A DNA stretch of 63,606 nt, the filler included, from Octopus bimaculoides (Eukaryota): assembly GCF_001194135.2 (NCBI RefSeq). It is 3 parts of 3 records of this genome, joined end to end, with 100 filler letters (N's around TTAATTAATTAA, not from the genome) between each part and the next. Parts side by side here need not be neighbours in the genome. Positions count along the whole stretch, not along the records: positions 29,365 to 59,936 come from NC_069004.1; 2 more parts are not named here. One strand, given 5' to 3'. Positions 9,683 through 48,250 of this stretch are shown here, in pieces. The notes under the pieces were generated by a model. It saw only the letters and a list, made by a program, of their open reading frames with translations. It made no database searches and was not told the origin of the DNA. The translations under genes were made by a program, and so were the position numbers. The number at the start of each line of letters is the position of its first letter. The first letter of the stretch is position 1.

Positions 9683-10122
9683 ACTCTTTCTACTCTTTCT
9701 ACACTTTAAAACATTTTTTCCCCTTTGTTATCTTTTTACAACCTGAAGCAGGTTTTCCTCACAGTTTATTGTTGATGGAGAAGGTAATACTATATAATTA
9801 CCTAAAAGTTTTTGAATATTGACAAAATACCTTAGAGAATTTTTCACAGATAACAATTGCTTGTGTTCTTCAATTTCTATCTTTATCTTTACATTTTTAA
9901 AAAAATTCTTTTCTTTTTTTTTATTTCAAACTTTAATTTATTTATATTTTCCTTTTTTCTTCTCATTTTACTTCGTTTTGCTCACAGATTTTTCTTTCCT
10001 CTCTTGTCTTCTCCCTCGTTCTCTCTCTCTCTGTCTCTCTCTCTTATTTTCTTTCTCTCACTGTCTTTTCTAACTTGTTTGGTTTGATTTAAACAGTTTC
10101 ATCATTTGAATTTCAAAAAAAA

Positions 10123-10153
<31 letters not shown>

Positions 10154-11646
10154 ATAACAACCCCAAAATATATTAAAAAATTTTTTTAGATATATAAATA
10201 AATAGAAAAAGAAACCGAAAACCAACAGCAACAAGAACAACAAGAACTACAACAACAATAATGATAATACTAAATAAATATAAAAATAAAGAAAAATAAA
10301 GAAAAATGTGAAAATTAAGTTCCTTTATTATTTTATATATTCTTCTTTCTTGAAAATGTCTTTTTACTTGTGATTTAGTAGAGAGAAAATAGGAAACACA
10401 CACACCCACACACACACACACACACACACACATGTTTACATATACATGCATGCATACATACATATACATATATATATATAGATAAATATTTATANNNNNN
10501 NNNNNNNNNNNNNNNNNNNNNNNNNNNNNNNNNNNNNNNNNNNNNNNNNNNNNNNNNNNNNNNNNNNNNNNNNNNNNNNNNNNNNNNNNNNNNNNNNNNN
10601 NNNNNNNNNNNNNNNNNNNNNNNNNNNNNNNNNNNNNNNNNNNNNNNNNNNNNNNNNNNNNNNNNNNNNNNNNNNNNNNNNNNNNNNNNNNNNNNNNNNN
10701 NNNNNNNNNNNNNNNNNNNNNNNNNNNNNNNNNNNNNNNNNNNNNNNNNNNNNNNNNNNNNNNNNNNNNNNNNNNNNNNNNNNNNNNNNNNNNNNNNNNN
10801 NNNNNNNNNNNNNNNNNNNNNNNNNNNNNNNNNNNNNNNNNNNNNNNNNNNNNNNNNNNNNNNNNNNNNNNNNNNNNNNNNNNNNNNNNNNNNNNNNNNN
10901 NNNNNNNNNNNNNNNNNNNNNNNNNNNNNNNNNNNNNNNNNNNNNNNNNNNNNNNNNNNNNNNNNNNNNNNNNNNNNNNNNNNNNNNNNNNNNNNNNNNN
11001 NNNNNNNNNNNNNNNNNNNGTAAAAAATACATTATTTCTCTTTACTGTTAGAAATGACTCCATCTTCAAAACACTTTGCGAATAAAACTATTTGAAGAGG
11101 TTGAAATAACGTCAAAAGACTTTGTAGTAACAGTTCCATTTCAATGGTATTGTTGCTCTTGAAAATTATTTCCAAAACTAGTGCTGTACAAGAACACAAT
11201 GGATGAAAATTTTTTTATTGTTGTTGTTGTTGTTGTTGTATGTGCCAGTGAAAAAAAAAAAAAAAAAAATGATGGTCTGTCTGTGTGATTTGTGAAGAAG
11301 ACAATTATGGATAATGTGGTTAAAACCAAAGTGATATTGTGTATCCATTTGTTCATTCCTGCTTGCTATGAATAGACATCTTTGATATCAAGCTAGAAAG
11401 AGGATAATTTTATCATCATTATCATGATCCTCGCCATCGTCTGTGTTGTTGTCATCTTCTTCTCCATCATCATTCTCATCATCATCATCATCATCATTAT
11501 CATCATCAGCAATAACAACAGCAGTTACAACTGCAACTCTTTTGTAGTTGTTGTAATTATTGTTGTTGTTCTAGTTCTTGTTAATATATATTTTCTTTGT
11601 TGTCTTTTCCATATATGTTATGATTATTATTGTTGCTGTTCTTTAC

Positions 11647-11677
<31 letters not shown>

Positions 11678-11699
11678 TTTATTTTATTATTATTATTAC

Positions 11700-11786
<87 letters not shown>

Positions 11787-13034
11787 CGTTGGTGGTGTTG
11801 TTATTGTTGTTGTTGTTGCTGCTTTATATTTTCTTTGTTGTCTTTTTTCCATATTCGTTGTTGTTGCTGCTGTTTGCTGTTGCTGATGACAACAATGATA
11901 ATGATGGTGGCTGCTGTCCATTGCATCTACGATGAGGATAACAATGCTGCTGTTTATAGATAATGATGATGATTAAGATCATGCGTGCGTTGGTGGTGGT
12001 GTGGGTAGATAATGCAGATAATGGTGATAATGATTATGACCTAGAAGATTATGATGAGAATACTGATGATGAGGAGCATCACTGCCATCATCATCATCAT
12101 CTTCATCATTATTATTATCACTGTAATCATCATCATCATCATCATCATCATCAGCATCATCATCTTCATCCTCATCATCATGATCATTCTCATGATGATC
12201 ATCATCTTTTTCATCATTATTTCATCATCTTGATCTTTATCATCTTCCTTTTTGATCATTACCATCATTATCATCACCTTTATCATCATTGTCATCTTCA
12301 TCATCATCACCATCATTATCACCATCATCATCATCACCATCATCACCATCACCATCATCACCATCACCATCATCATCTATATCATCATCATGATCTATAT
12401 CATCATCATCATCATCACCATCATCATAATCATCATGATCTTTATCATCATCATCATGCTTCCCCCTGGCATTGCAATACAACTATAACAATAACAATAA
12501 CAAAAAAAAAAATGAAAAGATACCACTAGCAAAGACCACTGACACCATTTTCACCATCACTACCACCACCACCACCACCACTACCATACCAATACTACCA
12601 CTTTAAGTTCCATCGTTACCACTACTACCACCAACATCATCACTAGCACTTCCACAGACACCACCACCACTGACAAGGCTACTTTCAACAACAATAGCAA
12701 CAACATCATCAGAAACCTTATGAGACATTCCAATGTGTCAGTGTTGGTTTTGCCCTCAGAGAAAGAAAAGGCTTGTGATATTTATGGATGATAGAGGAAA
12801 AAACACACAAAAGAAAACAAAACAAAAACAATATCAAAAAGAAAGACTGTAAAAAAGAGGAAAACAGAGAACTTCAAATTTCAAGAGATTTGAAACGAAA
12901 TAGGAAAGACCCATTTTCATTGAAAGACGATCTCTTTTATAAAAAGGAAATAAATACACTAACAAACATATATAAATAAATATATATTCAGAAGAAAAGT
13001 AAATATAAATTAACAAAATTGTTATTCTGATCAC

Positions 13035-13070
<36 letters not shown>

Positions 13071-13250
13071 CATCACTATCATCATCACTGTCATCATTGC
13101 CATCATCATATCATCTCCATCATTATCATCACCGTCATCATCATCATCACCGCCATCATTATCATTATCGTCATCGTCGTCATCATCGTTATCATCATTA
13201 TTGTTGTTGTTAGTATTATTATCAATATTAACATTACTAATAATATTTGG
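7998..13250. repeat. Compound microsatellite and low-complexity block: (CA)n, (CT)n, (ATT)n, (CAT)n, (GTT)n, with assembly gaps
   Basis: Seen directly; the ORFs here are homopolymeric in several frames. Confidence 0.95.
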
Positions 13251-13704
13251 AAATTTGACTATGTTTTCCTTGGTTTTCAAGGCAACATATGATATGAGAA
13301 AACACTCAGAAATAGTAATATTATGCTAAGATAAAAATCAATTTGTCCATTTTTATAAATATCTTCTAAGCCAAAAATTTTCTGGGTTTTGTAGTAGTTA
13401 TTGTTTATATTTAGTTTATTCTGTTGTTGCTATGTTTTGCTTTTGTTTGTTTGCTGTTATTTTTTTTTTTTGGTTATTTTAGTCTTTTTTTTTTTAGAGG
13501 ATTTTATTTCAGAACATGACACATGCACACACACACACACACACACACATACAAGCATACTTATGCATTTAAGCATGTATAAACACGCACACACACACAC
13601 ACACATAGATACATACATAAATATATGCAAATGGACAAACATGCATATAGATACACATAAGCATGCTTACAAATATAAACACACACACATGTATACATAT
13701 ATAC

Positions 13705-13742
<38 letters not shown>

Positions 13743-13745
<3 letters not shown>

Positions 13746-13990
13746 GGTGTAAGTGTGGCTGTGTGGTGAGAAGTTTGCTCCCCAACCACATGGTTCTGGG
13801 TTCAGTCCCACTGTGTAACACCTTGATCAATTGTCTTCTACTGTACTTACAGGCTGACCAAAGCCTTGTGAGTGGGTTTGATAGATGGAAACTAAAAGTA
13901 GCCCATCAAATATGTGCATGTTTGTCCACCACCACTGCTTGATGACCAGTGATGGGGTGTTTACATCCCTGCAACAGCAAATCAGCAAAA
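13743..13990 (+). mobile_element. SINE family A
   Basis: tRNA-like head, body, internal microsatellite and start of the tail. Confidence 0.85.
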
Positions 13991-32007: not shown

Positions 32008-33077
32008 TGAGGAGGTGCTGAAAAGTTCCTGGATTTAGGTAAAAGAAAATACAGGATGATCAGTTAATTATTATTCTGTTCAACATATTCCTCTCTCAGA
32101 TTCACACACATATTGCAGTGATCCTATGATTTTTCTAAGCCCTGTAAAAGGAACTAGGAAGGTTGGGCCTCCAACCAGATCTCTGTAGCAGCAATCACTT
32201 CTGAATCAGAGATAAATTTTGTTCCCTTGAGATGTCTCTTCAGTTGTGGAAAGAGATGATAATTGGAGGGGGCCAAATCAGGAAAGTAAGGTGGGTGGTC
32301 TACCAATTCAAAGCCAAGTCTGTAGGGTTTCATATGCTGTGTGTGATAGTACATTCTCCTGCAAAAACAGGACACCATGGTTCAGTTTTCCATAGCGTTT
32401 CTGCTTCAAAGCTTCACACAGTTCATCCAACAGAGACAAGTAGCATTCTGCATTGATGGTGCAACCCTTTGATAAGTATTATATGTGGAGTACTCTGTCT
32501 TCGTCTCAGAACACTTTCCATCTGAATTCTGGGTCTGAAACTTCTTGGGACATGGTGAACTGTTTGTTTGTGGCACCACTCCATTGATGCCGCTTGGGCT
32601 GGGAATCATGATGATGTAGACAAGTTTCGTCCATGGTAACTAAACAAGACATAAAATCAGCCTCTCTCACTGCAAACTGGTCCAAAATCATCTTCGATGT
32701 TATCACTCTGTGCTTCTGATCTGCATTCAGGCATTTCAGCACCCATTTCGAAGAAAGCTTTCTCAGGTCCAGAATGTGGATGATGTGGCCAGCTCTTTCA
32801 TGGGAAATCCCCAGAGTCCCAGCTATGACTTTAGCTGAAATTCAGTGGCCCTTGAGAATCACAACATGCACAGCATCAGCTCAATCCTCTGTGGTCACAG
32901 AAGTTGGCTACCCTATCCAAGGTTCACCTGTGACCTCAAAATATCCAGTTTGAAACCTTGACACCCAGTTTTTCATTGTAGAGTGAGATGGGCAGCCTCC
33001 TTGAGGACTTCCATCATCTCACCATGGATTTCCACTACTCCTTTGCTTTACAAAAAGAGGAACTTCATGACTGCCCA
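32008..33077 (-). mobile_element. Mariner transposase pseudogene with its 3' TIR
   Basis: VTMDET and HPPYFPDLAPSNYHLF motifs; TIR-like tgaggaggtgctgaaaagttcctgg after TA. Confidence 0.88.
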
Positions 33078-36145: not shown

Positions 36146-37343
36146 CAGATATGACGGAAGTAAATAGACATCCCCCAAAACATCTTTTTGATGTTTAATT
36201 ATAACTTGAGAATGTTTATGTTTTATATTAATTGACATTTTTATGTTTCAGGTTCTATATGTGACTGTTTAATGTTTAATCATGCCATGTACAAAAGAAG
36301 CCTTGGAACTGTCTGAATTTCAAAGAGGTTGTATTGTAAGTCAGTCTGAAGGTAGACTTAGCATAAAATTGCCGAAAAACTTGGGATCCCACTTTCTACA
36401 GTTAATAGAATGATTGTGCAATTCACCAGAGAGGGGAAGGAGTCCACATCATCTCTCCCATGTCGACCAGGGCCTTCTGACAGGACCCTTCTCTTTGCTA
36501 AGAGAAGTGTGGAGGATTATCCTCGTTGCAAGGCCTCTGACATAGCAGAACAAGTTGATGTCAGTCCCAGAACAGCTGTCAGGTATTTCCACAAACTTGG
36601 CTACTATGGCAGAGCAGCAAGAAGGAAGCCATTTCTTTGACCAGCCAATATCAAGTGGAGAAAAGATTGGGTCAGTGAGATGGTGGAGAGGCCTCTAGCA
36701 TTCTGGGACACTGTCATATTCTCTGATGAGTCTAGATTTGCTGTATTTTCTGACAGTGGACAAGTGTAGGTCTGGAGACTCTGTGATCAAGAATTTGATG
36801 TGAAAACATTGCAGCCAACAATGAAACATGGTGGCTATTCTGTGATGGTCTGGAGAACAATTTGGAGCTGGAGGACTGTGAGGAAAATATAAACTCAGAT
36901 AAATATGTGTCTATATTGCAGAAAGGGCTCCTTCTAGTCTTCTCCAGTGGTGAAATGATTAAAGAAGACTCTTTTTTTATGGAAGATGGGGCTCCTTGTC
37001 ACATGGCTAAAAAGACCCAAGATTGGTTGGATGAGAATGGCATTAAAAAGCTTCCATGGCCAAGCCAATCACCAGATATGAACCCTATTGAACAAGAAAG
37101 CATCCTCAAACCCAGATCTTTTGAGATTATTGCACAAAAGTTGGCAAAAAATTCCTCAAGAGAATGTTTGTCATCTGATCAATAGCATGCCTAATAGGGT
37201 CCTTGCATTGAAAAATACAAAGGGTGTGTCTATTAAATGATAGATATTCACATTATAATAGTTTATAAATAATTTGAATGTATAATTTCAGATTTAAACA
37301 AATTCTAATGATTATAAGGGTATCTATTTACTTCTGTAATGTC

Positions 37344-40249: not shown

Positions 40250-40495
40250 TCATCATCATCATCATCATCGTTTAACGTCCGCTTTCCATGCTAGCATGGG
40301 TTGGACGATTTGACTGAGGACTGGCGAACCAGATGGCTGCACCAGGCTACAATCTGATTTGGCAGAGTTTCTACAGCTGGATGCCCTTCCTAATGCCAAC
40401 CACTCTGAGAGTGTAGTGGGTACTTTTACGTGCCACCGACACAAGTGCCCGGAAGGCGACGCTGGTAACAATCACACTCAAATGGTGCTATTTAC
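40250..40495 (-). mobile_element. RTE 3' UTR and tail, young copy
   Basis: (CAT)n-cgtttaacgtccgctttccatgctagcatggg...gatgcccttcc. Confidence 0.88.
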
Positions 40496-40581
40496 GATTT
40501 ATATATATGTATATATATAATATATATGTATCATATTTATCTTTATATACATATTATATTTATCGATCTATCTATTTATTA

Positions 40582-41949: not shown

Positions 41950-42650
41950 ATAATCACCAATGCCTCTTTTTCAATTTGGCTCTAATTTTTTCTGCTGGCA
42001 ATAGTGTCCTTGACGCATGAGCTATGGCCTTTTGGCTGCTGTCTTCACATTTGTGTAAGAGTACAGCACCTACCTCGTACTCATTAGCATCTGTTGCCAG
42101 TATCGTTTCCAACTTCGGATCAATTTGTGGAAGTGACTTGTCTGAAGTTAACATACTTTTTAGTTCCTCAAATGCCTTCTGGCATTTTTCTGACCAAAAC
42201 CATTTGGCATCCTTTTTAATAGCTCATTTAGTGGAGCCCTTGTGTTGTGTATGTTGAGGATATATACTTGATAGTAGTTTACCAAGCCTAAAAATTTGAT
42301 GTTCATCGGGGGAAGCATATTCCGTATTGCCATCGCCCTTAATGGGTCGGGGTTTCATCCCCTTTTGTTAATTACTTGACCTAAATATTTGATTTTTATC
42401 ATCAAAAATTCACACTTTTCCTGTTAGTCTAAACCTGTACTCACTTATTTTTCCAAATACTTATGGTGTGTGTTGATTCTTAAAAGGTGTGCGCAATCTT
42501 CTACTTGTCTCTATAGATGGGCCTCCAAGAGGTCTAACTTCAAGAAACATTTTCTTCCATTTAGTTTTGAGAACACTTCTTCTGGGCTTGGTAATGGATA
42601 ATTGTGTTTGACTAAACAGCCATTTAATCCAGTTGAAAAGTCTGTATGCA
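41950..42650 (-). mobile_element. Ty3/Gypsy pol relic (RT and RNase H)
   Basis: DFSTGLN, a frameshifted PLPSPEEVFSKLNG-type segment, and ATDANEYEVGAVLLHKCEDSSQKAIAHASRTLLPAEK. Confidence 0.85.
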
Positions 42651-42729
42651 CTCTTAGTTTATTATTATTTTCTTTACACAACCCGTCAGAGCAGCCCAGT
42701 CTGAATGGTCAACTTTTTCAGTGGTAGAG

Positions 42730-44400
42730 TATGCGCCATTCTAGTCAATATTCTATCTTTATGTCCTTAAGCTCCCAGATATAGTTACTAAGCCCTGTTG
42801 AATTTGCCTTACTCCTATTTCTGAAGCTAGTTTGGTGTGCATTGTAACTAAGTATCATTTGGTTTGTCGTGGCTCCTTTATAGGATTTTATATGGCTATT
42901 TGTGTGTATGTTACATTGGTAAACTATGTTTTTAGTCTTACATATATTAGAGAATTGGCACTTACTTCTATCCCTGCAGGCACATAAATTATTAAGTATA
43001 TCTGTGTTCATGTTGTGTTGTGGGGTGCTATTACTACTCTGGTCTTTGTCTTTATTACTAGGAGGCACTTCATTAGTGGTGGGATTTGTTCTATTAGTCT
43101 GTTGGTTGTTACATTTATTGTTCTTAATTTTCCTAGAATGTGTCTAGTTTTTTATCATCAATCGAGGCTATGATGGCAGCTAAGTTACTAGTCAGGCTGT
43201 GGCCTACTCTAATTTTCTATCTAAATATTGCTGCATATTTATTACTTACATTTAAGTGTTTATCTATTAGTTTCATTAATGAGTAAACAAAGTTGGATTT
43301 GAGGCGCATGGCAAAAGGGATTACGAGCCAGAGCTTATCACTATTATGTTTATTGTTAGTATTGCTATGCCTGGTATAGAAACTACTCTCATTGTAAAGC
43401 GTGTGAAATTATAGTTATGGCTATTGAGTTTATTTCTATAGTTGGGTTTATCTTTACTATTGCTCTTGTTTGTTTTATTGGGGTTATTTCTGTATGGTTT
43501 ATGTGAACTCAATGAGCTGGTGTTATGGTTTTTAACAGGGTTTATCTTTGTTCTTTGGGGCTCTTTATTTTTATTCTTATCGATGTGTAGGTTTATATTA
43601 TTCTTGTTATAGCTATTGTAGTGACGTCATTTGGCGCCAAAATACAGTTGCCATTACTGCGTTTTCATCCACGCATACGCAGGGAATAGTTCCGAGGGAA
43701 CACAGGAAGAGTCCCATGCGCATGCGTAGTTCGACTCTCTCAACATTTTCCAGCGTTTTATCTTCCTCTTGCGTCGACAACTTCGTGGGCGAAGGACGTG
43801 TTTTGTATCGCTCTCTTCGAGACCCAACACTCTCGTGATGAGGTCAGCGGACAAGTGAAGAAACGACCAACAGCCAAATAACCAATGCTGTATGAATATA
43901 CCGACAAGAACTGCCGAATATCCATGCTGTTTGAATAACTACATAAATAAATATTGTTATGTTTCTGGTTTAGAGACTGCGTTATCCGTTCTTAAATTTT
44001 TCCTTAAAGTTTGATGTGAGGAATTAGTTATTTAACCTAAAGGTTGAAGAAAGAAAGATATTTCTTACGCTATTATTATTTTACAACTTATTTTTATGAT
44101 TCGTGTTATTAGTTATGTTAGTGTTGTTAATTTTATTTATTATCCCATTGCTGGTATTCATGTTGTCGTTGTTTGTAATATTATTGATGATTTGTGTATG
44201 GGACTTAACGCTTTTGCTATTGCTATTATTTTTGTTGAGCTTATCTATGCTGTTCTTATTGTTGGTGTAGCTTCTATTGACGTTAGATATTATCATATGG
44301 ATTTAGGTTATTTGTATAGCGATTGGGGTGTAGGTATTTAATTTTTTGTTTAAATCTTGCTTTATCTAATGTGATATTATAGATTTCCTTCATCCCTTAG
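42730..44400 (-). mobile_element. Penelope-like retroelement, 3' part: end of RT, long Asn/Lys-rich linker, thumb-like segment and GIY-YIG endonuclease (pseudogene)
   Basis: KLWLVIPFAMRLKSNFVYSLMKLIDKHLNVSNKYAAIF, then CACRDRSKCQFSNICKTKNIVYQC...SYKGATT...YNAHQTSFR...STGLSNYIWELKD. Confidence 0.85.
43617..43943. mobile_element. Probable solo LTR (327 bp) interrupting the Penelope-like element
   Basis: Ends TGTAGT...ACTACA (6-bp inverted, TG..CA); GC- and CpG-rich against AT-rich flanks; no clean TSD. Confidence 0.5.
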
Positions 44401-44479
44401 AGGTTTTAAATACCTCTATCTTATACCTATATATATATATATATACATACATACATACACATATATGTATATATATATC

Positions 44480-44766
44480 AGTACCGCCTGACTGGCTCTC
44501 GTAGGATTTTCGAGCGAGATCGTTGCCAGTGCCCCTGGACTGGCTTGTGCGGGTGGCACATAAAAGACACCATTTCGAGCGTGGCCGTTTTCGTGCGGGT
44601 GACACGTAAAAGCACCCACTACACTCTCTGAGTGGTTGGCGTTAGGAAGGGCATCCAGCTGTAGAAACTCTGCTAAATTAGACTGGAGCCTGGTGTTGCC
44701 ATCCGGTTTCACCAGTCCTCAGTCAAATCGTCCAACCCATGCTAGCATGGAAAGCGGACGTTAAAC

Positions 44767-45274: not shown

Positions 45275-45500
45275 TGTGTGCATGAATGTATTTGTGTGTC
45301 TGTATTTGTCCCTCCACCATCGCTTGACAGCCAATGTTGGTGTGTTTATGTCTCCATAACTTAGCAGTTCGGCAAAAGAGTCCAATAGAATAAGTACTAG
45401 GCTTACAAAGAATAAGTCCTGGGGTCGATTTGTTCAACTAAAGGCGGTGCTCTAGCACGGCTGCGGTTAAATGACTAAAACAAGTCAAAGAATAAAAAAA
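45206..45500 (+). mobile_element. SINE family A, 3' half
   Basis: Internal microsatellite and tail ending ...aaacaagtcaaagaataaaa. Confidence 0.85.
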
Positions 45501-45788
45501 CAAAGAATAAAATGGTGTAAATACACCTAAATCAGCTCACAGCACCACCCATCCTGAAATTTTCTCCATGACAAAACACAGTGAACGGTTTGTTTGCAAG
45601 TCTAAATGTGCTGCTGGCATATTCAGACTCGTAATAACATTGCATTTATATGCATCACTGCTTAGCGTTCCAATCCCATAATTTAATTATGATGAGCCTT
45701 TGATTAGCTCTTCCAGCCGACATATGTTGACTGGAATAACATAAGAGAGATGTATGTTGACTGGAATAACACAAGAGAGATTGGTGGT

Positions 45789-45835
45789 CTGTGACTGAAG
45801 AGGGATAACCACTCCGAAATGGTTGCATCTCACAG
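45789..45835 (+). ncRNA. Type I hammerhead ribozyme, retrozyme copy 1
   Basis: CTGTGA-CTGAAGA-GGG(ATAACCAC)TCC-GAAA-TG(GTTG)CA-TC^TCACAG; predicted cut after 45829. Confidence 0.88.
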
Positions 45836-46090
45836 TCTGGATAGGTGGCACTGTGAGCTAATTTAGGTGAATTTATACCATTTGTCTACAGTGAGAAATT
45901 TTCTCCATGATAAAACACAGTAAATGGCTTGTTTGCAAATCTAAATGTGCCGTGAACTAGTAATAACATTGCATTTATACGCATCACTGCTTAGCCTTCC
46001 CACCCTGTAATTTAATTAAGATGAGCCGTTGATTAGCTCTTCCAGCCGACGTATATTGACTGGAATAATATAAGAGAGATTGTCTCTTTT

Positions 46091-46195
46091 ATTAGCTCAC
46101 AGCACCACCGTTTGATGGTGCTGTGACTGAAGAGGAGATAACTTCTCTGAAATGGTTGCATCTTACTGTGTGGATAGGTGGCGCTGCGAGCTAAT
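46091..46195 (+). ncRNA. Type I hammerhead ribozyme, retrozyme copy 2, with extended stem I
   Basis: CTGTGA-CTGAAGA-GGAG(ATAACTT)CTCT-GAAA-TG(GTTG)CA-TC^TTACTG; distal stem ATTAGCTCACAGCACCACC / GGTGGCGCTGCGAGCTAAT; predicted cut after 46162. Confidence 0.82.
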
Positions 46196-47269
46196 TTAGG
46201 TGAATTTATACCATTTGTCTACAGTGAGAAATTTTCTCCATGACAAATTAATGGCTTATTTACAAGTCTGAACATACTGCACACATATTTGAATTGGTAA
46301 TAACATTGCACGTATACATATAAGCATACACACATATACATGCATACATACAAATACACACACACACGCACGCACATATATATATACAAGATGAGGACAA
46401 ATATCTGTCAAATGTAAATAATATAAATAATGTACATATGCACATGTACACACATATGCATACACATACACACACATGCATACACTTATACATACATGAA
46501 CATACCCATTCGTACATCTACATACCCATACGTACATCTACATACACATAAACACTTACATACATATAAACATACATACACAAATACGTGCTTACATATA
46601 TGCACATATACAGATGTATACATACACATACATACACACACACATACATGACACATACATGAATTCATAAATGCATACACATATACATATGCACATACAC
46701 ATAGACACATACACATACACATAGACATATAGACATATGTACATACACATAGACACACATACATATATATATACATACATAAATGCATGCACATATGCAC
46801 ACATATGCATACACATACACACATAAAAACACATGTACATGCATACACAAATGCATACACGTATATCCATATGCACTTATACACGCAGATACATATACAT
46901 ACACTCATATACACACACATACACACACATACACACACATAGGTTTCAGTCCAAAAGAATCATATATAATGGCTCCAAACAACATCAAGCATATTTCATT
47001 TTACTATAAAAATAAGGATAATATTTAGGTCAAATTCTGAAACTAGCTTCACAGCAAGCCATGAAATAACAGAGTGTTGAGGACCCCAGGAGGAAGTTTA
47101 GCTATCACATGTCTTTCTAAAGTGATAACAGTATTCATATTTAGGTCATGTCCTTCATAACAGAACCATAAAGAAAAAAAGCACAAAAATCAATGAACTG
47201 AAAAAAAATTAAAAATTAAGTAAGCTTTAATCATATATATGCAATACACATGCACATACACATGTATGA

Positions 47270-48250
47270 TGCCTGGGTGTGAACAGCCATGCTACATGGC
47301 AGTAAAACATGGGTTGTGACTGCTGAGGATATGTGTAGGCTTGAAAGAAATGAAGCTAGTATGCTCCATTGGCTGTGTAATGTCAGTGTGCGTGCACAAC
47401 AGAGTGTAAGTGCCCTGAGAGAAAAGTTTGACATAAGAAGCATGAGATGCGGTGTACAAGGGAGACAACTGCACTGGTATGGTCATGTATTGCATATGGA
47501 TGAGGAAAGCTGTGTGTAGAAGTGTCACACCCTAACAGTGGAGGGAACCTTTGGAAGAGGTAGATCCAGGAAAATATGGGATGAGGAGGTGAAGTACGAC
47601 CTAGAATGTTGGGCCTCACAGAGGTAATGACAAGCAACCAAAACCTTTCGAGCCATGTTGTGCTTGAGAAGACCTAGCAAGCCAAGTGAGAGAGGCCAAT
47701 GCCAGTGTTGCATTGGTCGACTTAAAAGTGCCCTTCAATCGTCAGTCGATATGTTGTGCTTGTGAAAACCTGTTAAACCAAGTGAAGTCATAGTCATGGC
47801 CAACAACAGTAATGGTAATCGTAGTCATGGCCAATACCAATGCAGCCTGATGGGCACGGGTGCCAGTGGCACATAAAAAGCACCAGTCGAGCGTAGCCAC
47901 TGCCTAGTGCCACTTGACTGGCACCCATGCTGGTGGCATGTAAAATGCACCATTTGAGCATGGCTGATGCCAGTGTTGCCTGGCTGACATTCGTGTAGGT
48001 GGTACATAAAAAGTACCATTCGAGCATGGCAAATGCCAGTGCCACCTGACTGGTACCCATGCCAGTGGCATGTAAATATCACCCACTACACTTTCAGAGT
48101 GGTTGGCATTAGGAAGGGCATCCAGCTGTAGAAACCTTGCCAAATCAGATTGGAGCCTGGTGCAGCCTCCCGGCTTACCAGTTCTCCGTCAGACTGTCCA
48201 ACCCATACCAGCATGGAAAGCAGACGTTAGACAATGATGATGATGGTGAT
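47270..48250 (+). mobile_element. 5'-truncated RTE LINE: RT C-terminus, repeated-unit 3' UTR and (ATG)n tail
   Basis: MLHGSKTWVVTAEDMCRLERNEASML...LHWYGHVLHMDE followed by the UTR and tail. Confidence 0.9.

What the first reader, a model, noticed from the sequence alone, without database searches (positions are those of the whole stretch)
45513..46310. Candidate cephalopod retrozyme: tandem 333-nt units, each with a type I hammerhead, predicted to release a small circular RNA
Seen: about 2.3 tandem units (periods 339 and 333), and both complete units carry a canonical core (CUGAAGA...GAAA...AUC), stem III AUG-GUUG-CAU and stem I CUGUGA/UCACAG. The predicted cuts after 45829 and 46162 are 333 nt apart. 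Known: non-LTR retrozymes of animals (newt satellite 2, Schistosoma Sm-alpha, cricket pDo500) are tandem repeats of a few hundred bp with one type I hammerhead per unit; their multimeric transcripts self-cleave to monomers that circularise, and they are thought to be mobilised by Penelope-like elements. Inference: this is such an element. I do not know of a description in Octopus but cannot search to confirm that.
Basis: partly seen in the sequence, partly recalled or inferred. Interest (0 to 1): 0.9.

Follow-up and report, generated by a model that had tools for sequence, protein, structure and literature searches.

The report
Decayed hammerhead retrozyme tandem repeat
About 0.8 kb holds 2.3 head-to-tail copies of a 333-base repeat, each with a self-cutting hammerhead RNA motif, from a family of a few hundred copies in this genome; it is an old, worn copy of a known kind of animal mobile element (a retrozyme), and the RNA data give no sign that this copy still makes RNA circles.

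Summary
The tandem array and both type I hammerhead motifs are real and not chance: a structural descriptor finds only these two sites in the 30.5-kb piece and none in 300 shuffles. Genomic reads of the same organism show a family of roughly 300 copies. They share the ribozyme plus about 100 nt downstream.

The family consensus is a textbook metazoan type I hammerhead: helix I 6 bp, helix II 4 bp, helix III 2 bp plus a tetraloop. It repairs every defect seen in the two local copies, so this locus is an old, mutated insertion.

The unit fits the published definition of animal non-LTR retrozymes: 333 nt, 39% GC, no ORF, strongly self-paired as a circle (z = -4.8). A 48-nt inverted fragment at the 5' edge and a microsatellite at the 3' edge resemble Penelope-type integration.

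- Rfam's hammerhead models do not score either copy.
- Most of the locus has no RNA reads in three deep RNA-seq runs.
- No RNA ends fall at the predicted cut sites, and no circle evidence was obtained.

Two other runs, guessed to be RNA, hold very deep short contigs identical to the consensus ribozyme's 3' half; this is unexplained.

Verdict: a new member of a known kind, of modest interest.

The parts
45510..45557 (-). Inverted 48-nt fragment at the 5' edge of the insertion. It is the reverse complement of unit positions 7-54 (45836-45883) and is joined head-to-head to the first direct unit.
   Evidence: Inverted repeats I1 and I2 are 85-87% complementary. blastn gives a minus-strand hit at 85%. 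The junction was read.
45556..45829 (+). Unit 0. It is 5'-truncated, starting at about unit position 66. It contains a local 30-bp duplication (45723-45781) and ends at the first predicted cleavage site.
45789..45835 (+). Hammerhead copy 1, type I: CUGUGA-CUGAAGA-GGG(AUAACCAC)UCC-GAAA-UG(GUUG)CA-UC|UCACAG, with the predicted cut after 45829. Lesions relative to the family consensus: one base missing after 45803, which shortens helix II to 3 bp, and 45822 C>G, which allows a competing UAACCA/UGGUUG pairing.
   Evidence: an A is put in behind 45803 in about 76% of family reads; 45822 is C in 85%; the minimum-free-energy fold of the local copy is not the hammerhead fold.
45830..46162 (+). Unit 1, the only complete monomer (333 nt, 39% GC) between the two predicted cut sites.
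   Evidence: Folded as a circle it gives -95 kcal/mol against -70 +/- 5 for shuffles, z = -4.8.
46091..46109 (+). 19-nt arm (AUUAGCUCACAGCACCACC) upstream of hammerhead 2. It is complementary to GGUGGCACUGUGAGCUAAU, found downstream of each hammerhead (45844-45862 and 46177-46195). This pairing extends helix I into a long rod with the ribozyme at its tip.
   Evidence: Inverted repeat I3. The same upstream arm appears in the loose-end consensus of other family copies.
46121..46168 (+). Hammerhead copy 2: CUGUGA-CUGAAGA-GGAGA(UAACU)UCUCU-GAAA-UG(GUUG)CA-UC|UUACUG, with the predicted cut after 46162. Lesions relative to consensus: C11.1>U (46148), 1.2 C>U (46164), 1.5 A>U (46167), and 46170 C>G.
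   Evidence: helix I is only 4 consecutive pairs; the family majority restores C, C, A and C at these positions.
46163..46316 (+). Partial unit 2, about 155 nt. It ends where the (ACAT)n-like microsatellite begins (46316-46940).

Best explanation
This is an old, mutated genomic insertion of a non-autonomous retroelement of the animal 'non-LTR retrozyme' type. It consists of a 48-nt inverted fragment followed by 2.3 tandem 333-nt units, each ending in a canonical type I hammerhead ribozyme.

Shown here:
- the tandem anatomy;
- the complete hammerhead core and its three helices;
- a family of a few hundred related copies in the same genome, whose consensus is an intact ribozyme;
- a strongly self-paired predicted circle;
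- no coding capacity.

Inferred from the published retrozyme model (PMC7229834, PMC7761336):
1. Source copies of the family are transcribed as multimers.
2. The hammerheads cut after the AUC triplet. With such a short helix III they probably act as pairs through its near-palindromic sequence. The product is a 333-nt monomer with 5'-OH and 2',3'-cyclic phosphate ends.
3. A host RNA ligase closes the monomer into a rod-like circle.
4. A reverse transcriptase, most likely from a Penelope-like element, copies the circle round and round into tandem cDNA.
5. The cDNA integrates, here next to a microsatellite and with an inverted 5' piece.

The copy in this window has since decayed. It is not detectably transcribed in the RNA runs examined, and it is probably a relic rather than a working source of circles.
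For: - **Not chance.** The descriptor finds exactly these two sites and none in 300 shuffles.
- **Architecture.** It equals the published 'canonical metazoan type I' hammerhead: helix I 6 bp, helix II 4 bp, helix III 1-2 bp plus a 2-4 nt loop (PMC4209133). [quoted passage not shown]
- **Copy number.** Genomic raw reads laid at 80% or more give a depth of about 190-310 per run over 45813-45924, against about 0-1 over the locus-specific stretch 45757-84, at about 0.7x sampling. That means a few hundred copies.
- **The family consensus repairs all local lesions.** An A is added after 45803, 46148 becomes C, 46164 C, 46167 A and 46170 C.
- **Core and helix II are constrained.** A6, A7, G8, A9, G10.1, A13, A14, U16.1 and the first four bases of loop 2 vary in under 3% of about 550-700 reads.
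- **Loops vary.** Loop 3 positions vary by 15-22% and one loop 2 position by 30-55%.
- **CpG decay.** The only frequent changes at conserved positions are at the C11.1-G12 CpG (C>T 23-34%, G>A 16-22%), as expected in dead copies, and U4>C at 14%.
- **Possible compensation in helix I.** 2.1 A>G (14%) goes with 1.1 U>C (9%), and 2.2 G>U (4%) with 1.2 C>A (9.5%). Haplotypes were not seen.
- **Folding.** The circular fold has z = -4.8 and GC is 39%. The consensus folds into helix I (6 bp), an internal loop, 9 more pairs, and helix II.
- **No adjoining genes.** No ORF or Penelope gene adjoins the array.
- **Integration pattern.** The inverted 5' piece and the microsatellite flank match the 'tandem/inverted insertions' and microsatellite bias described for Penelope-like elements (PMC8557442).
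- **Single polarity, DNA-encoded.** The hammerhead is on one strand only, and the locus is present in DNA runs.
Against: - Rfam's hammerhead covariance models give no match at all, even at E<=10 with each copy searched alone.
- No RNA evidence of cleavage or circles was found. In three RNA-seq runs the locus has zero coverage over 45641-45776 and 46253-46315, and only one or two reads across 46015-46116. Nowhere does depth exceed about 23 per direction at 90% or more identity.
- At 80% or more identity, the family's RNA coverage is dominated by one variant locus that is read straight through the cut site, in both directions, with no read ends at 45829/45830.
- The family is no better represented in RNA than in DNA reads. 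Published retrozymes are highly expressed.
- Only the ribozyme plus about 100 nt is widely shared. The rest of the unit recruits about 10-40 times fewer reads.
- Tandem organisation at other loci is shown by only one contig junction.
- No target-site duplication was found.
- The link to Penelope-like elements was not tested on sequence.
Confidence: 0.78

Rival explanations
1. One reading: this locus is a working retrozyme. It is transcribed, both hammerheads cut, and the 45830-46162 monomer is released and circularised today.
For: - Both cores are intact.
- Copy 1 keeps a 6-bp helix I and a 3-bp helix II.
- The monomer folds strongly as a circle.
- The RNA libraries may be poly(A)-selected and so blind to circles.
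Against: - Each local ribozyme carries lesions that the family consensus lacks.
- Neither local copy takes the hammerhead fold as its minimum-free-energy structure.
- There are no RNA reads over large parts of the locus, and almost none at 99% or more identity outside the SINE.
- No read ends fall at the cut sites.
- The units differ from each other by about 8-10% plus indels, which points to an old insertion.
Confidence: 0.08
2. It is not a separate non-autonomous element. It is a fragment of the terminal repeat (pLTR) of an autonomous Penelope-like element, left behind after the coding part was lost or never copied.
For: - Penelope-like elements carry hammerheads in their terminal repeats and insert as partial tandems with an inverted 5'-truncated copy (PMC8557442; PMC4209133).
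- In Xenopus, retrozyme families are sister to pLTRs (bioRxiv 10.64898/2026.07.22.740005).
- Octopus genomes hold many Penelope copies (PMC13282606 and PMC8967140).
Against: - No reverse transcriptase or GIY-YIG ORF of the Penelope type lies within several kb. The neighbours are a SINE, microsatellites, an LTR-retrotransposon pol remnant and LINE-like fragments.
- The ribozyme has the canonical architecture, not the 'minimal' one reported for metazoan Penelope elements (helix II of 7-8 bp, helix I of 4-5 bp, almost no helix III).
- The repeat period is 333 nt, not about 3 kb.
Confidence: 0.1
3. It is a SINE-like hammerhead element of the Schistosoma Sm-alpha kind. Such elements are transcribed by RNA polymerase III from internal promoter boxes and spread as single copies. 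The tandem form here would then be a local duplication.
For: - The consensus of other copies reads ..ACGGGTTCGAATATGCC.. about 100 nt after the cut site, which resembles a B box (loose ends).
- Most family reads cover only the ribozyme plus about 100 nt, as short dispersed copies would.
- The Cells 2020 review regards non-LTR retrozymes as a kind of SINE.
Against: - No tRNA-like structure was found.
- No A box lies at the proper distance (read by eye).
- T-runs that would stop polymerase III occur inside the unit (AATTTTCTCC).
- Units at this locus join exactly head to tail at the ribozyme. One contig from another copy shows the same junction (46162 to 45833).
Confidence: 0.04
4. It is a chance hammerhead-like motif inside an ordinary local tandem duplication, with no ribozyme biology.
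For: Rfam models do not recognise it. No cleavage was seen in RNA.
Against: - There are 0 descriptor hits in 300 shuffles.
- Hundreds of genomic copies have the core nearly invariant, the loops variable, and a consensus that is a better ribozyme than either local copy.
Confidence: 0.01

Closest known systems
Metazoan non-LTR retrozymes (Acropora millepora, Mytilus galloprovincialis, Ambystoma mexicanum; Cervera & de la Pena 2020, PMC7229834)
   Same: [quoted passage not shown]
- Low GC (39%), with no LTR, PBS, PPT or ORF.
- Many dispersed copies with heterogeneous bodies.
- A predicted highly self-paired circle.
- Helix III of 2 bp plus a tetraloop, as in invertebrate examples.
   Different: - High constitutive expression and circles are the hallmark of the published cases, and they were not seen here.
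- The copy number is low (hundreds, against thousands to 120,000).
- This locus is mutated.
- No cephalopod case appears in the literature I could search.
Newt/salamander satellite 2 hammerhead repeats (about 330 bp)
   Same: The unit length is nearly the same. Both have a type I hammerhead with a weak, near-palindromic helix III, which suggests action as a double hammerhead in multimeric transcripts.
   Different: - There is no sequence relationship.
- Helix III here has 2 bp plus a tetraloop rather than 1 bp.
- Newt arrays are long satellites, whereas this is a 2.3-unit insertion.
Hammerheads in the terminal repeats of Penelope-like elements (Cervera & de la Pena 2014, PMC4209133; Craig et al. 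2021, PMC8557442)
   Same: Both have a type I hammerhead, partial tandem arrangement, an inverted 5'-truncated piece at the upstream edge, and insertion beside microsatellites.
   Different: The ribozyme is canonical rather than minimal, there is no adjoining RT/GIY-YIG gene, and the period is 333 nt rather than element length.
Schistosoma Sm-alpha and cave-cricket pDo500 hammerhead repeats
   Same: Both are short non-coding repeats with a type I hammerhead whose extended helix I carries an internal loop facing loop 2.
   Different: Sm-alpha is SINE-like with polymerase III features and a longer helix III. Here no tRNA-like part was found and helix III is short.
Plant LTR retrozymes and viroid-like or HDV-like circular RNAs
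   Same: The concept is the same: hammerhead-flanked units processed to small rod-like circles.
   Different: - Plant elements use type III hammerheads, LTRs, a PBS and a PPT, and have high GC.
- Viroid-like agents are RNA replicons, often with ribozymes in both polarities.
- Here the element is DNA-encoded and has a ribozyme on one strand only.

Membership tests
Hammerhead ribozyme, type I (structural definition) | Conserved core: C3 U4 G5 A6 N7 G8 A9, G12 A13 A14, the A15.1-U16.1 pair, and H17 at the cut site | tested here: met
   Both copies read CUGAAGA ... GAAA ... AUC. Core positions are nearly invariant across about 550-700 family reads, apart from CpG decay at C11.1/G12 and U4>C in 14%.
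Hammerhead ribozyme, type I (structural definition) | Three helices around the core, with helix I open (type I) and helices II and III closed by loops | tested here: met
   The descriptor gives hits at 45795-45829 (helices of 6, 3 and 3 bp) and 46127-46162 (4, 5 and 3 bp), with 0 in 300 shuffles. The family consensus has 6, 4 and 3 bp, counting A15.1-U16.1.
Hammerhead ribozyme, type I (structural definition) | Self-cleavage at the predicted phosphodiester bond | not testable with these tools
   This needs in vitro transcription. RNA-seq shows no excess of read ends at 45829/45830, but those reads come mostly from one variant relative.
Rfam Hammerhead families (RF00163 and relatives) | Score at or above the curated gathering threshold of the covariance model | tested here: not met
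   No hammerhead match was found at gathering score or at E<=10 on 1.1 kb. None was found on each copy alone with the laxest filters. Possible reasons are my inference only: the AUC triplet, U15.2-A16.2, the very short helix III, and the local lesions.
Metazoan non-LTR retrozyme (PMC7229834) | Short tandem DNA repeats (about 150-450 bp, dimers to multimers) with one type I hammerhead per unit | tested here: met
   The locus has 2.3 units of 333 nt. For other family members only one tandem-type junction was seen (46162 to 45833 in a 900-nt contig).
Metazoan non-LTR retrozyme (PMC7229834) | Low GC (<45-50%), no LTR/PBS/PPT, and no protein-coding capacity | tested here: met
   GC is 39%. Only short or low-complexity ORFs overlap the array and none has a family match. 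The repeats are head-to-tail units, not terminal repeats around a body.
Metazoan non-LTR retrozyme (PMC7229834) | Many dispersed genomic copies | tested here: met
   Read depth over the ribozyme and the next 100 nt or so is about 200-300 times that of the locus-specific stretch 45757-84, in three DNA runs. That means hundreds of copies. Dispersal itself is inferred from the varied flanking 'loose ends'.
Metazoan non-LTR retrozyme (PMC7229834) | Predicted circle is highly self-paired | tested here: met
   The circular fold is -95 kcal/mol against -70 +/- 5 for 200 shuffles, z = -4.8.
Metazoan non-LTR retrozyme (PMC7229834) | Abundant expression as monomer-length linear and circular RNA | tested here: inconclusive
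   - The locus is essentially silent in three RNA-seq runs.
- Family reads are no more frequent in RNA than in DNA and are dominated by one read-through locus.
- Two runs guessed to be RNA hold short contigs of word depth about 37,000 and 8,500 that match the consensus ribozyme's 3' half. Two sister runs hold only 30 and 300.
- Library selection is unknown, and circles cannot be told from tandem transcripts with these data.
Metazoan non-LTR retrozyme (PMC7229834) | Co-occurrence with autonomous Penelope-like elements in the same genome | not tested
   No Penelope gene lies in the 30.5-kb piece. The literature reports abundant Penelope elements in Octopus (PMC13282606 and PMC8967140). The organism is coded in the tools, so the species was not verified.
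Penelope-like element terminal repeat (pLTR) | Flanks an ORF encoding a telomerase-like RT and a GIY-YIG endonuclease | tested here: not met
   No such ORF lies within about 6 kb on either side. The nearest RT-related remnant is of LTR-retrotransposon type (RT_RNaseH_2, E = 4e-19, at 41957-42223 on the minus strand).
Penelope-like element terminal repeat (pLTR) | Minimal hammerhead variant in metazoans: long helix II, short helix I, little or no helix III | tested here: not met
   The consensus has helix I of 6 bp, helix II of 4 bp and helix III of 2 bp plus a tetraloop. This is the 'canonical' class of PMC4209133.
Viroid-like / HDV-like circular RNA replicon | An RNA-only genome, often with ribozymes in both polarities | tested here: not met
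   The sequence is present in many DNA runs of the organism. The hammerhead descriptor hits the + strand only.

The most novel reading that the evidence does not exclude
The family is a living cephalopod retrozyme system. On this reading a few source copies differ from this locus outside the ribozyme and are very highly expressed in particular tissues or stages, which would explain the 8,500-37,000-deep contigs in two runs. They would be cut by paired hammerheads through the palindromic helix III, circularised, and copied by the host's Penelope elements into tandem and inverted insertions such as this one. The long double-stranded rod could also be a substrate for the heavy A-to-I editing known in these animals.
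Probability: 0.2. Interest if true: 0.5.

Novelty: new member of a known kind. Interest (0 to 1): 0.3.

Why it matters
It extends the known range of hammerhead-bearing circular-RNA retroelements to what appears to be a cephalopod genome. It also yields a clean consensus ribozyme that can be tested directly.

The locus preserves an integration footprint: tandem units, an inverted 5' piece and a microsatellite flank. This bears on the open question of which enzyme mobilises animal retrozymes, since it looks like Penelope-type integration.

Practically, it flags a repeat family that standard annotation (Rfam, Tandem Repeats Finder) misses. It does not change the current picture of retrozymes, and this particular copy is probably inert.

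Tried and rejected
- **Rfam.** Four searches found no hammerhead: gathering score, E<=10 on 1.1 kb, and each copy alone. The only 'hits' (mir-297 and others at 46314-46394) lie in the microsatellite and are low-complexity artefacts.
- **Tandem Repeats Finder.** It did not report the 333-nt period. The array was recovered with the repeat finder, MAFFT and blastn.
- **Target-site duplication.** Nothing longer than 5 nt is shared between the two edges.
- **tRNA-like or polymerase III origin.** ARAGORN found nothing. The sigma-70 and terminator scan is irrelevant for an animal genome and was uninformative.
- **Adjoining Penelope gene.** ORF lists, six-frame reading and Pfam found only an LTR-retrotransposon RNase H remnant; LINE-like and Mariner/Tc1-like fragments were identified by eye.
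- **GIY-YIG-like frame.** The frame at 42748-43143 has no Pfam match. I did not pursue it, because it is 2.4 kb away and on the other strand.
- **Other copies in the piece.** There are none.
- **RNA-run index.** No RNA run holds this locus's exact words.
- **Not run.** I decided against a large protein-database search for Penelope elements, because no Penelope protein from this window was available as a query.
Full report
**1. What is in the sequence**

Between a very abundant SINE (45301-45505, + strand, A-rich tail) and an (ACAT)n-like microsatellite (46316-46940) lies an 0.8-kb block. It has five parts:
- an inverted 48-nt fragment, 45510-45557;
- a 5'-truncated unit, 45556-45829;
- one complete 333-nt unit, 45830-46162;
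- a partial unit, 46163 to about 46316;
- a local 30-bp duplication inside the first unit, 45723-45781.

The repeats show up as follows:
- The repeat finder gives direct repeats with spacings of 329, 332, 333 and 339 nt and 90-92% identity in ungapped blocks. It also gives the inverted pair 45510-45557 / 45836-45883, 85% complementary.
- By blastn, the complete unit matches the first unit at 81% and the last at 79%, gaps included. There is no other copy in the 30.5-kb piece.
- Tandem Repeats Finder missed the array.

**2. The hammerheads**

Both sites carry CUGAAGA, GAAA, helix III A-U/U-A/G-C closed by GUUG, and an AUC cut triplet. The cuts after 45829 and 46162 are 333 nt apart.

My structural descriptor finds exactly these two sites on the + strand, nothing on the - strand, and nothing in 300 dinucleotide-preserving shuffles. 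A looser sequence-only pattern gave 7 matches against 0.85 expected.

Copy 2 has UUACUG, not UCACAG, as the 3' strand of helix I, and a G-U at the 10.1-11.1 pair. Copy 1 has a one-base deletion that leaves helix II with 3 bp.

Neither local copy takes the hammerhead fold as its minimum-free-energy structure.

Rfam's covariance models give no hammerhead match at the gathering score, at E<=10 on 1.1 kb, or on each copy alone. I take that as a real failure of the Rfam membership test, not as evidence against a hammerhead. The field finds these motifs with descriptors (PMC7229834, PMC8557442). The AUC triplet, the U-A second pair and the very short helix III all depart from what I recall of the model consensus; that explanation is my inference.

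**3. The family**

Public runs of the same (coded) organism hold the locus in DNA. Three runs of genomic raw reads were sampled at about 1.9 Gb each and laid at 80% or more identity.
- Depth is about 190-310 per run over 45813-45924.
- Depth is about 0-1 over the locus-specific stretch 45757-45784.
- Depth is about 5-15 over 45673-45756.
- If the genome is about 2.8 Gb, this means roughly 300 copies of a module made of the ribozyme plus about 100 nt downstream. The rest of the unit is far more divergent.
- Most reads are under 90% identical to this locus, so the family is old.

The majority base in the family differs from the window at exactly the places where the local ribozymes are defective:
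- an A is added after 45803, restoring GGAG/CUCC;
- 46148 T>C restores C11.1;
- 46164 T>C, 46167 T>A and 46170 G>C restore UCACAGUC;
- 45822/46155 G>C makes loop 3 CUUG.

The consensus is ...CCGG-UUU-CUGUGA-CUGAAGA-GGAG-AUAAC(C/U)A-CUCC-GAAA-UG-CUUG-CA-UC|UCACAG-U-CUGG... This is the 'canonical metazoan type I' layout described in PMC4209133: helix I 6 bp, helix II 4 bp, short helix III with a small loop. It folds into helix I, an internal loop (UUU/U) and nine further pairs, plus helix II.

**4. Variation across about 550-700 family reads**

- Under 3% at A6, A7, G8, A9, G10.1, A13, A14, U16.1 and the first four loop 2 bases (AUAA).
- 15-22% at three loop 3 positions.
- 30-55% at one loop 2 position.
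- The frequent changes at conserved positions are C11.1>U (23-34%) and G12>A (16-22%). Together these form a CpG, so this is the usual decay of dead copies.
- U4>C occurs in 14%, probably together with 2.1 A>G in one sub-lineage. A contig reading CUGCGGCCGAAGAG appears.
- 2.1 A>G (14%) with 1.1 U>C (9%), and 2.2 G>U (4%) with 1.2 C>A (9.5%), would be compensatory. I could not see haplotypes, so this is only suggestive.
- 17-19% of copies have CAUG or CUAG in loop 3. That makes AUGC-NN-GCAU a perfect 10-nt palindrome. This fits the double-hammerhead mode proposed for ribozymes with weak helix III (PMC4209133, PMC7229834).

**5. Unit properties**

- The complete unit has 39% GC.
- Folded as a circle it reaches -95 kcal/mol, against -70 +/- 5 for 200 shuffles, z = -4.8.
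- A 19-nt arm upstream of the ribozyme (46091-46109) pairs with the segment downstream of it (45844-45862 and 46177-46195). The ribozyme therefore sits at the tip of a long rod.
- The same arm is seen in the consensus of other copies.
- No meaningful ORF overlaps the array.

**6. RNA evidence**

*This locus, at 90% or more identity.* In three deep RNA-seq runs (6% sampled), the SINE collects thousands of reads. The array has zero coverage over 45641-45776 and 46253-46315, only one or two reads across 46015-46116, and at most about 23 per direction elsewhere. Both directions are represented, and no pile-up of ends occurs anywhere.

*The family, at 80% or more identity.* The conserved module collects about 130-165 reads of depth. 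These are dominated by a single variant locus (45822C, 45823A, 45830C, 45833A, 45842C; flank consensus agreement 0.98) and run straight through the cut site. Per million reads the family is no better represented in RNA than in DNA.

So the RNA data do not support the claim that this locus releases a circle. The libraries' selection method is unknown, and poly(A) selection would hide circles.

*Older runs kept as contigs and guessed to be RNA.*
- One 900-nt contig joins 46162 to 45833. This is a unit-to-unit junction from another copy, and it could be tandem or circular.
- Two runs (X8, X5) hold contigs of word depth about 37,000 and 8,500. They match only 45804-45847 and 45805-45838, that is, the consensus 3' half of the ribozyme, with 45822 G>C as the sole frequent difference.
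- Two sister runs from the same study as X8 hold only 30 and 300.
- X8 also has deep contigs (10,000-14,000) on 46205-46260.
They could be an expressed relative with different flanks, or a technical oddity.

**7. Surroundings**

No Penelope-type gene lies nearby. The neighbours are:
- the SINE and microsatellites;
- an LTR-retrotransposon pol remnant (Pfam RT_RNaseH_2, E = 4e-19, 41957-42223, minus strand);
- a GIY-YIG-like frame without a Pfam match (42748-43143, minus strand);
- LINE-like and Mariner/Tc1-like fragments.

No target-site duplication was found.

The inverted 5' fragment is unit positions 7-54, joined head-to-head to position 66 or so. Together with the microsatellite at the 3' edge, it resembles the 'complex tandem/inverted insertions' and microsatellite bias described for Penelope-like elements (PMC8557442). 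Several 'opposite strands' joints at other positions appear among the genomic reads. The element's own inverted repeats could produce some of them.

**8. Mechanism**

Shown here:
- the motif and the tandem units;
- the multi-copy family with a constrained ribozyme;
- the rod-like fold and the lack of coding capacity;
- the insertion footprint.

Inferred from the published model (PMC7229834, PMC7761336):
1. Source copies are transcribed as multimers.
2. The RNA is cleaved after AUC, probably by paired ribozymes.
3. A host ligase closes the monomer into a circle.
4. A Penelope-type enzyme carries out rolling-circle reverse transcription.
5. The tandem cDNA integrates.

This copy is most likely a relic of that process.

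**9. Comparison and novelty**

[quoted passage not shown] The Rfam test fails.

It does not fit:
- a Penelope terminal repeat, because there is no adjoining gene and the ribozyme is canonical rather than minimal;
- a viroid-like replicon, because it is DNA-encoded and has a ribozyme on one strand only.

Retrozymes are already described in a mollusc (mussel) and in many phyla. I found no paper describing them in cephalopods, and a recent detailed Octopus repeat annotation does not mention ribozymes. I rate it a new member of a known kind, with interest about 0.3.

Noticed in passing
window 45301-45505 (+): A SINE copy whose A-rich tail abuts the array. It has enormous depth in DNA-like contigs (up to about 5.7 million summed word depth in X1) and thousands of RNA reads in both directions. 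ARAGORN finds no tRNA-like fold in it.
   Followed up: partly
runs X8 and X5 laid on window 45804-45847 and 46205-46260: Very deep short contigs (word depth about 37,000 and 8,500) match only the consensus 3' half of the ribozyme. X8 also has 10,000-14,000 depth on 46205-46260. Sister runs X10 and X13 have only 30 and 300. This is unexplained. It could be a highly expressed relative with different flanks.
   Followed up: partly
window 42748-43143 (-): A 132-aa stop-to-stop frame with a GIY-YIG-like pattern (KNIVYQCNI ... SYKGATTNQ ... AHQTSFRNR ... STGLSNYIWELKD) preceded by cysteines. It has no Pfam match. It could be a remnant of an endonuclease-bearing element.
   Followed up: partly
window 41957-42708 (-): An LTR-retrotransposon pol remnant. 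Pfam RT_RNaseH_2 matches at E = 4e-19 on 41957-42223, and RT-like frames with stop codons lie upstream.
   Followed up: yes
window 47283-47516 (+) and about 49.8 kb (-): Two inverted relatives of a LINE-like RT C-terminal fragment (..HGSKTWVVTAEDMCRLERNEASMLHW.. and ..HGSEIWAVMVEDVQRLERNESTMLCW..). Neither has a Pfam match.
   Followed up: partly
window 32509-32841 (-), 36362-37182 (+): Mariner/Tc1-like transposase fragments, identified by eye from the stop-to-stop frames.
   Followed up: no
window 40268-40517, 44419-44718, 47907-48188: A repeated module that translates as ..LQSDLAEFLQLDALPNANHSESVVG.. occurs three times, each beside a microsatellite. It is probably another interspersed repeat family.
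   Followed up: no
window 46314-46394 (-): Sub-threshold Rfam matches to mir-297, mir-3149, mir-1277 and others lie in the (ACAT)n-like microsatellite. They are low-complexity artefacts.
   Followed up: yes
family consensus, about 100 nt after the cut site (aligned to window 45926-45951): Other copies read ..CTTACGGGTTCGAATATGCC.., which contains a B-box-like GGTTCGAA. In the window the stretch has decayed to TTTGCAAATCTAAATGTGCC (loose ends). This is a lead for a polymerase III promoter or a tRNA-derived part.
   Followed up: no
window about 50.7-51.4 kb: A run of 1937 N (an assembly gap) lies inside the piece.
   Followed up: no
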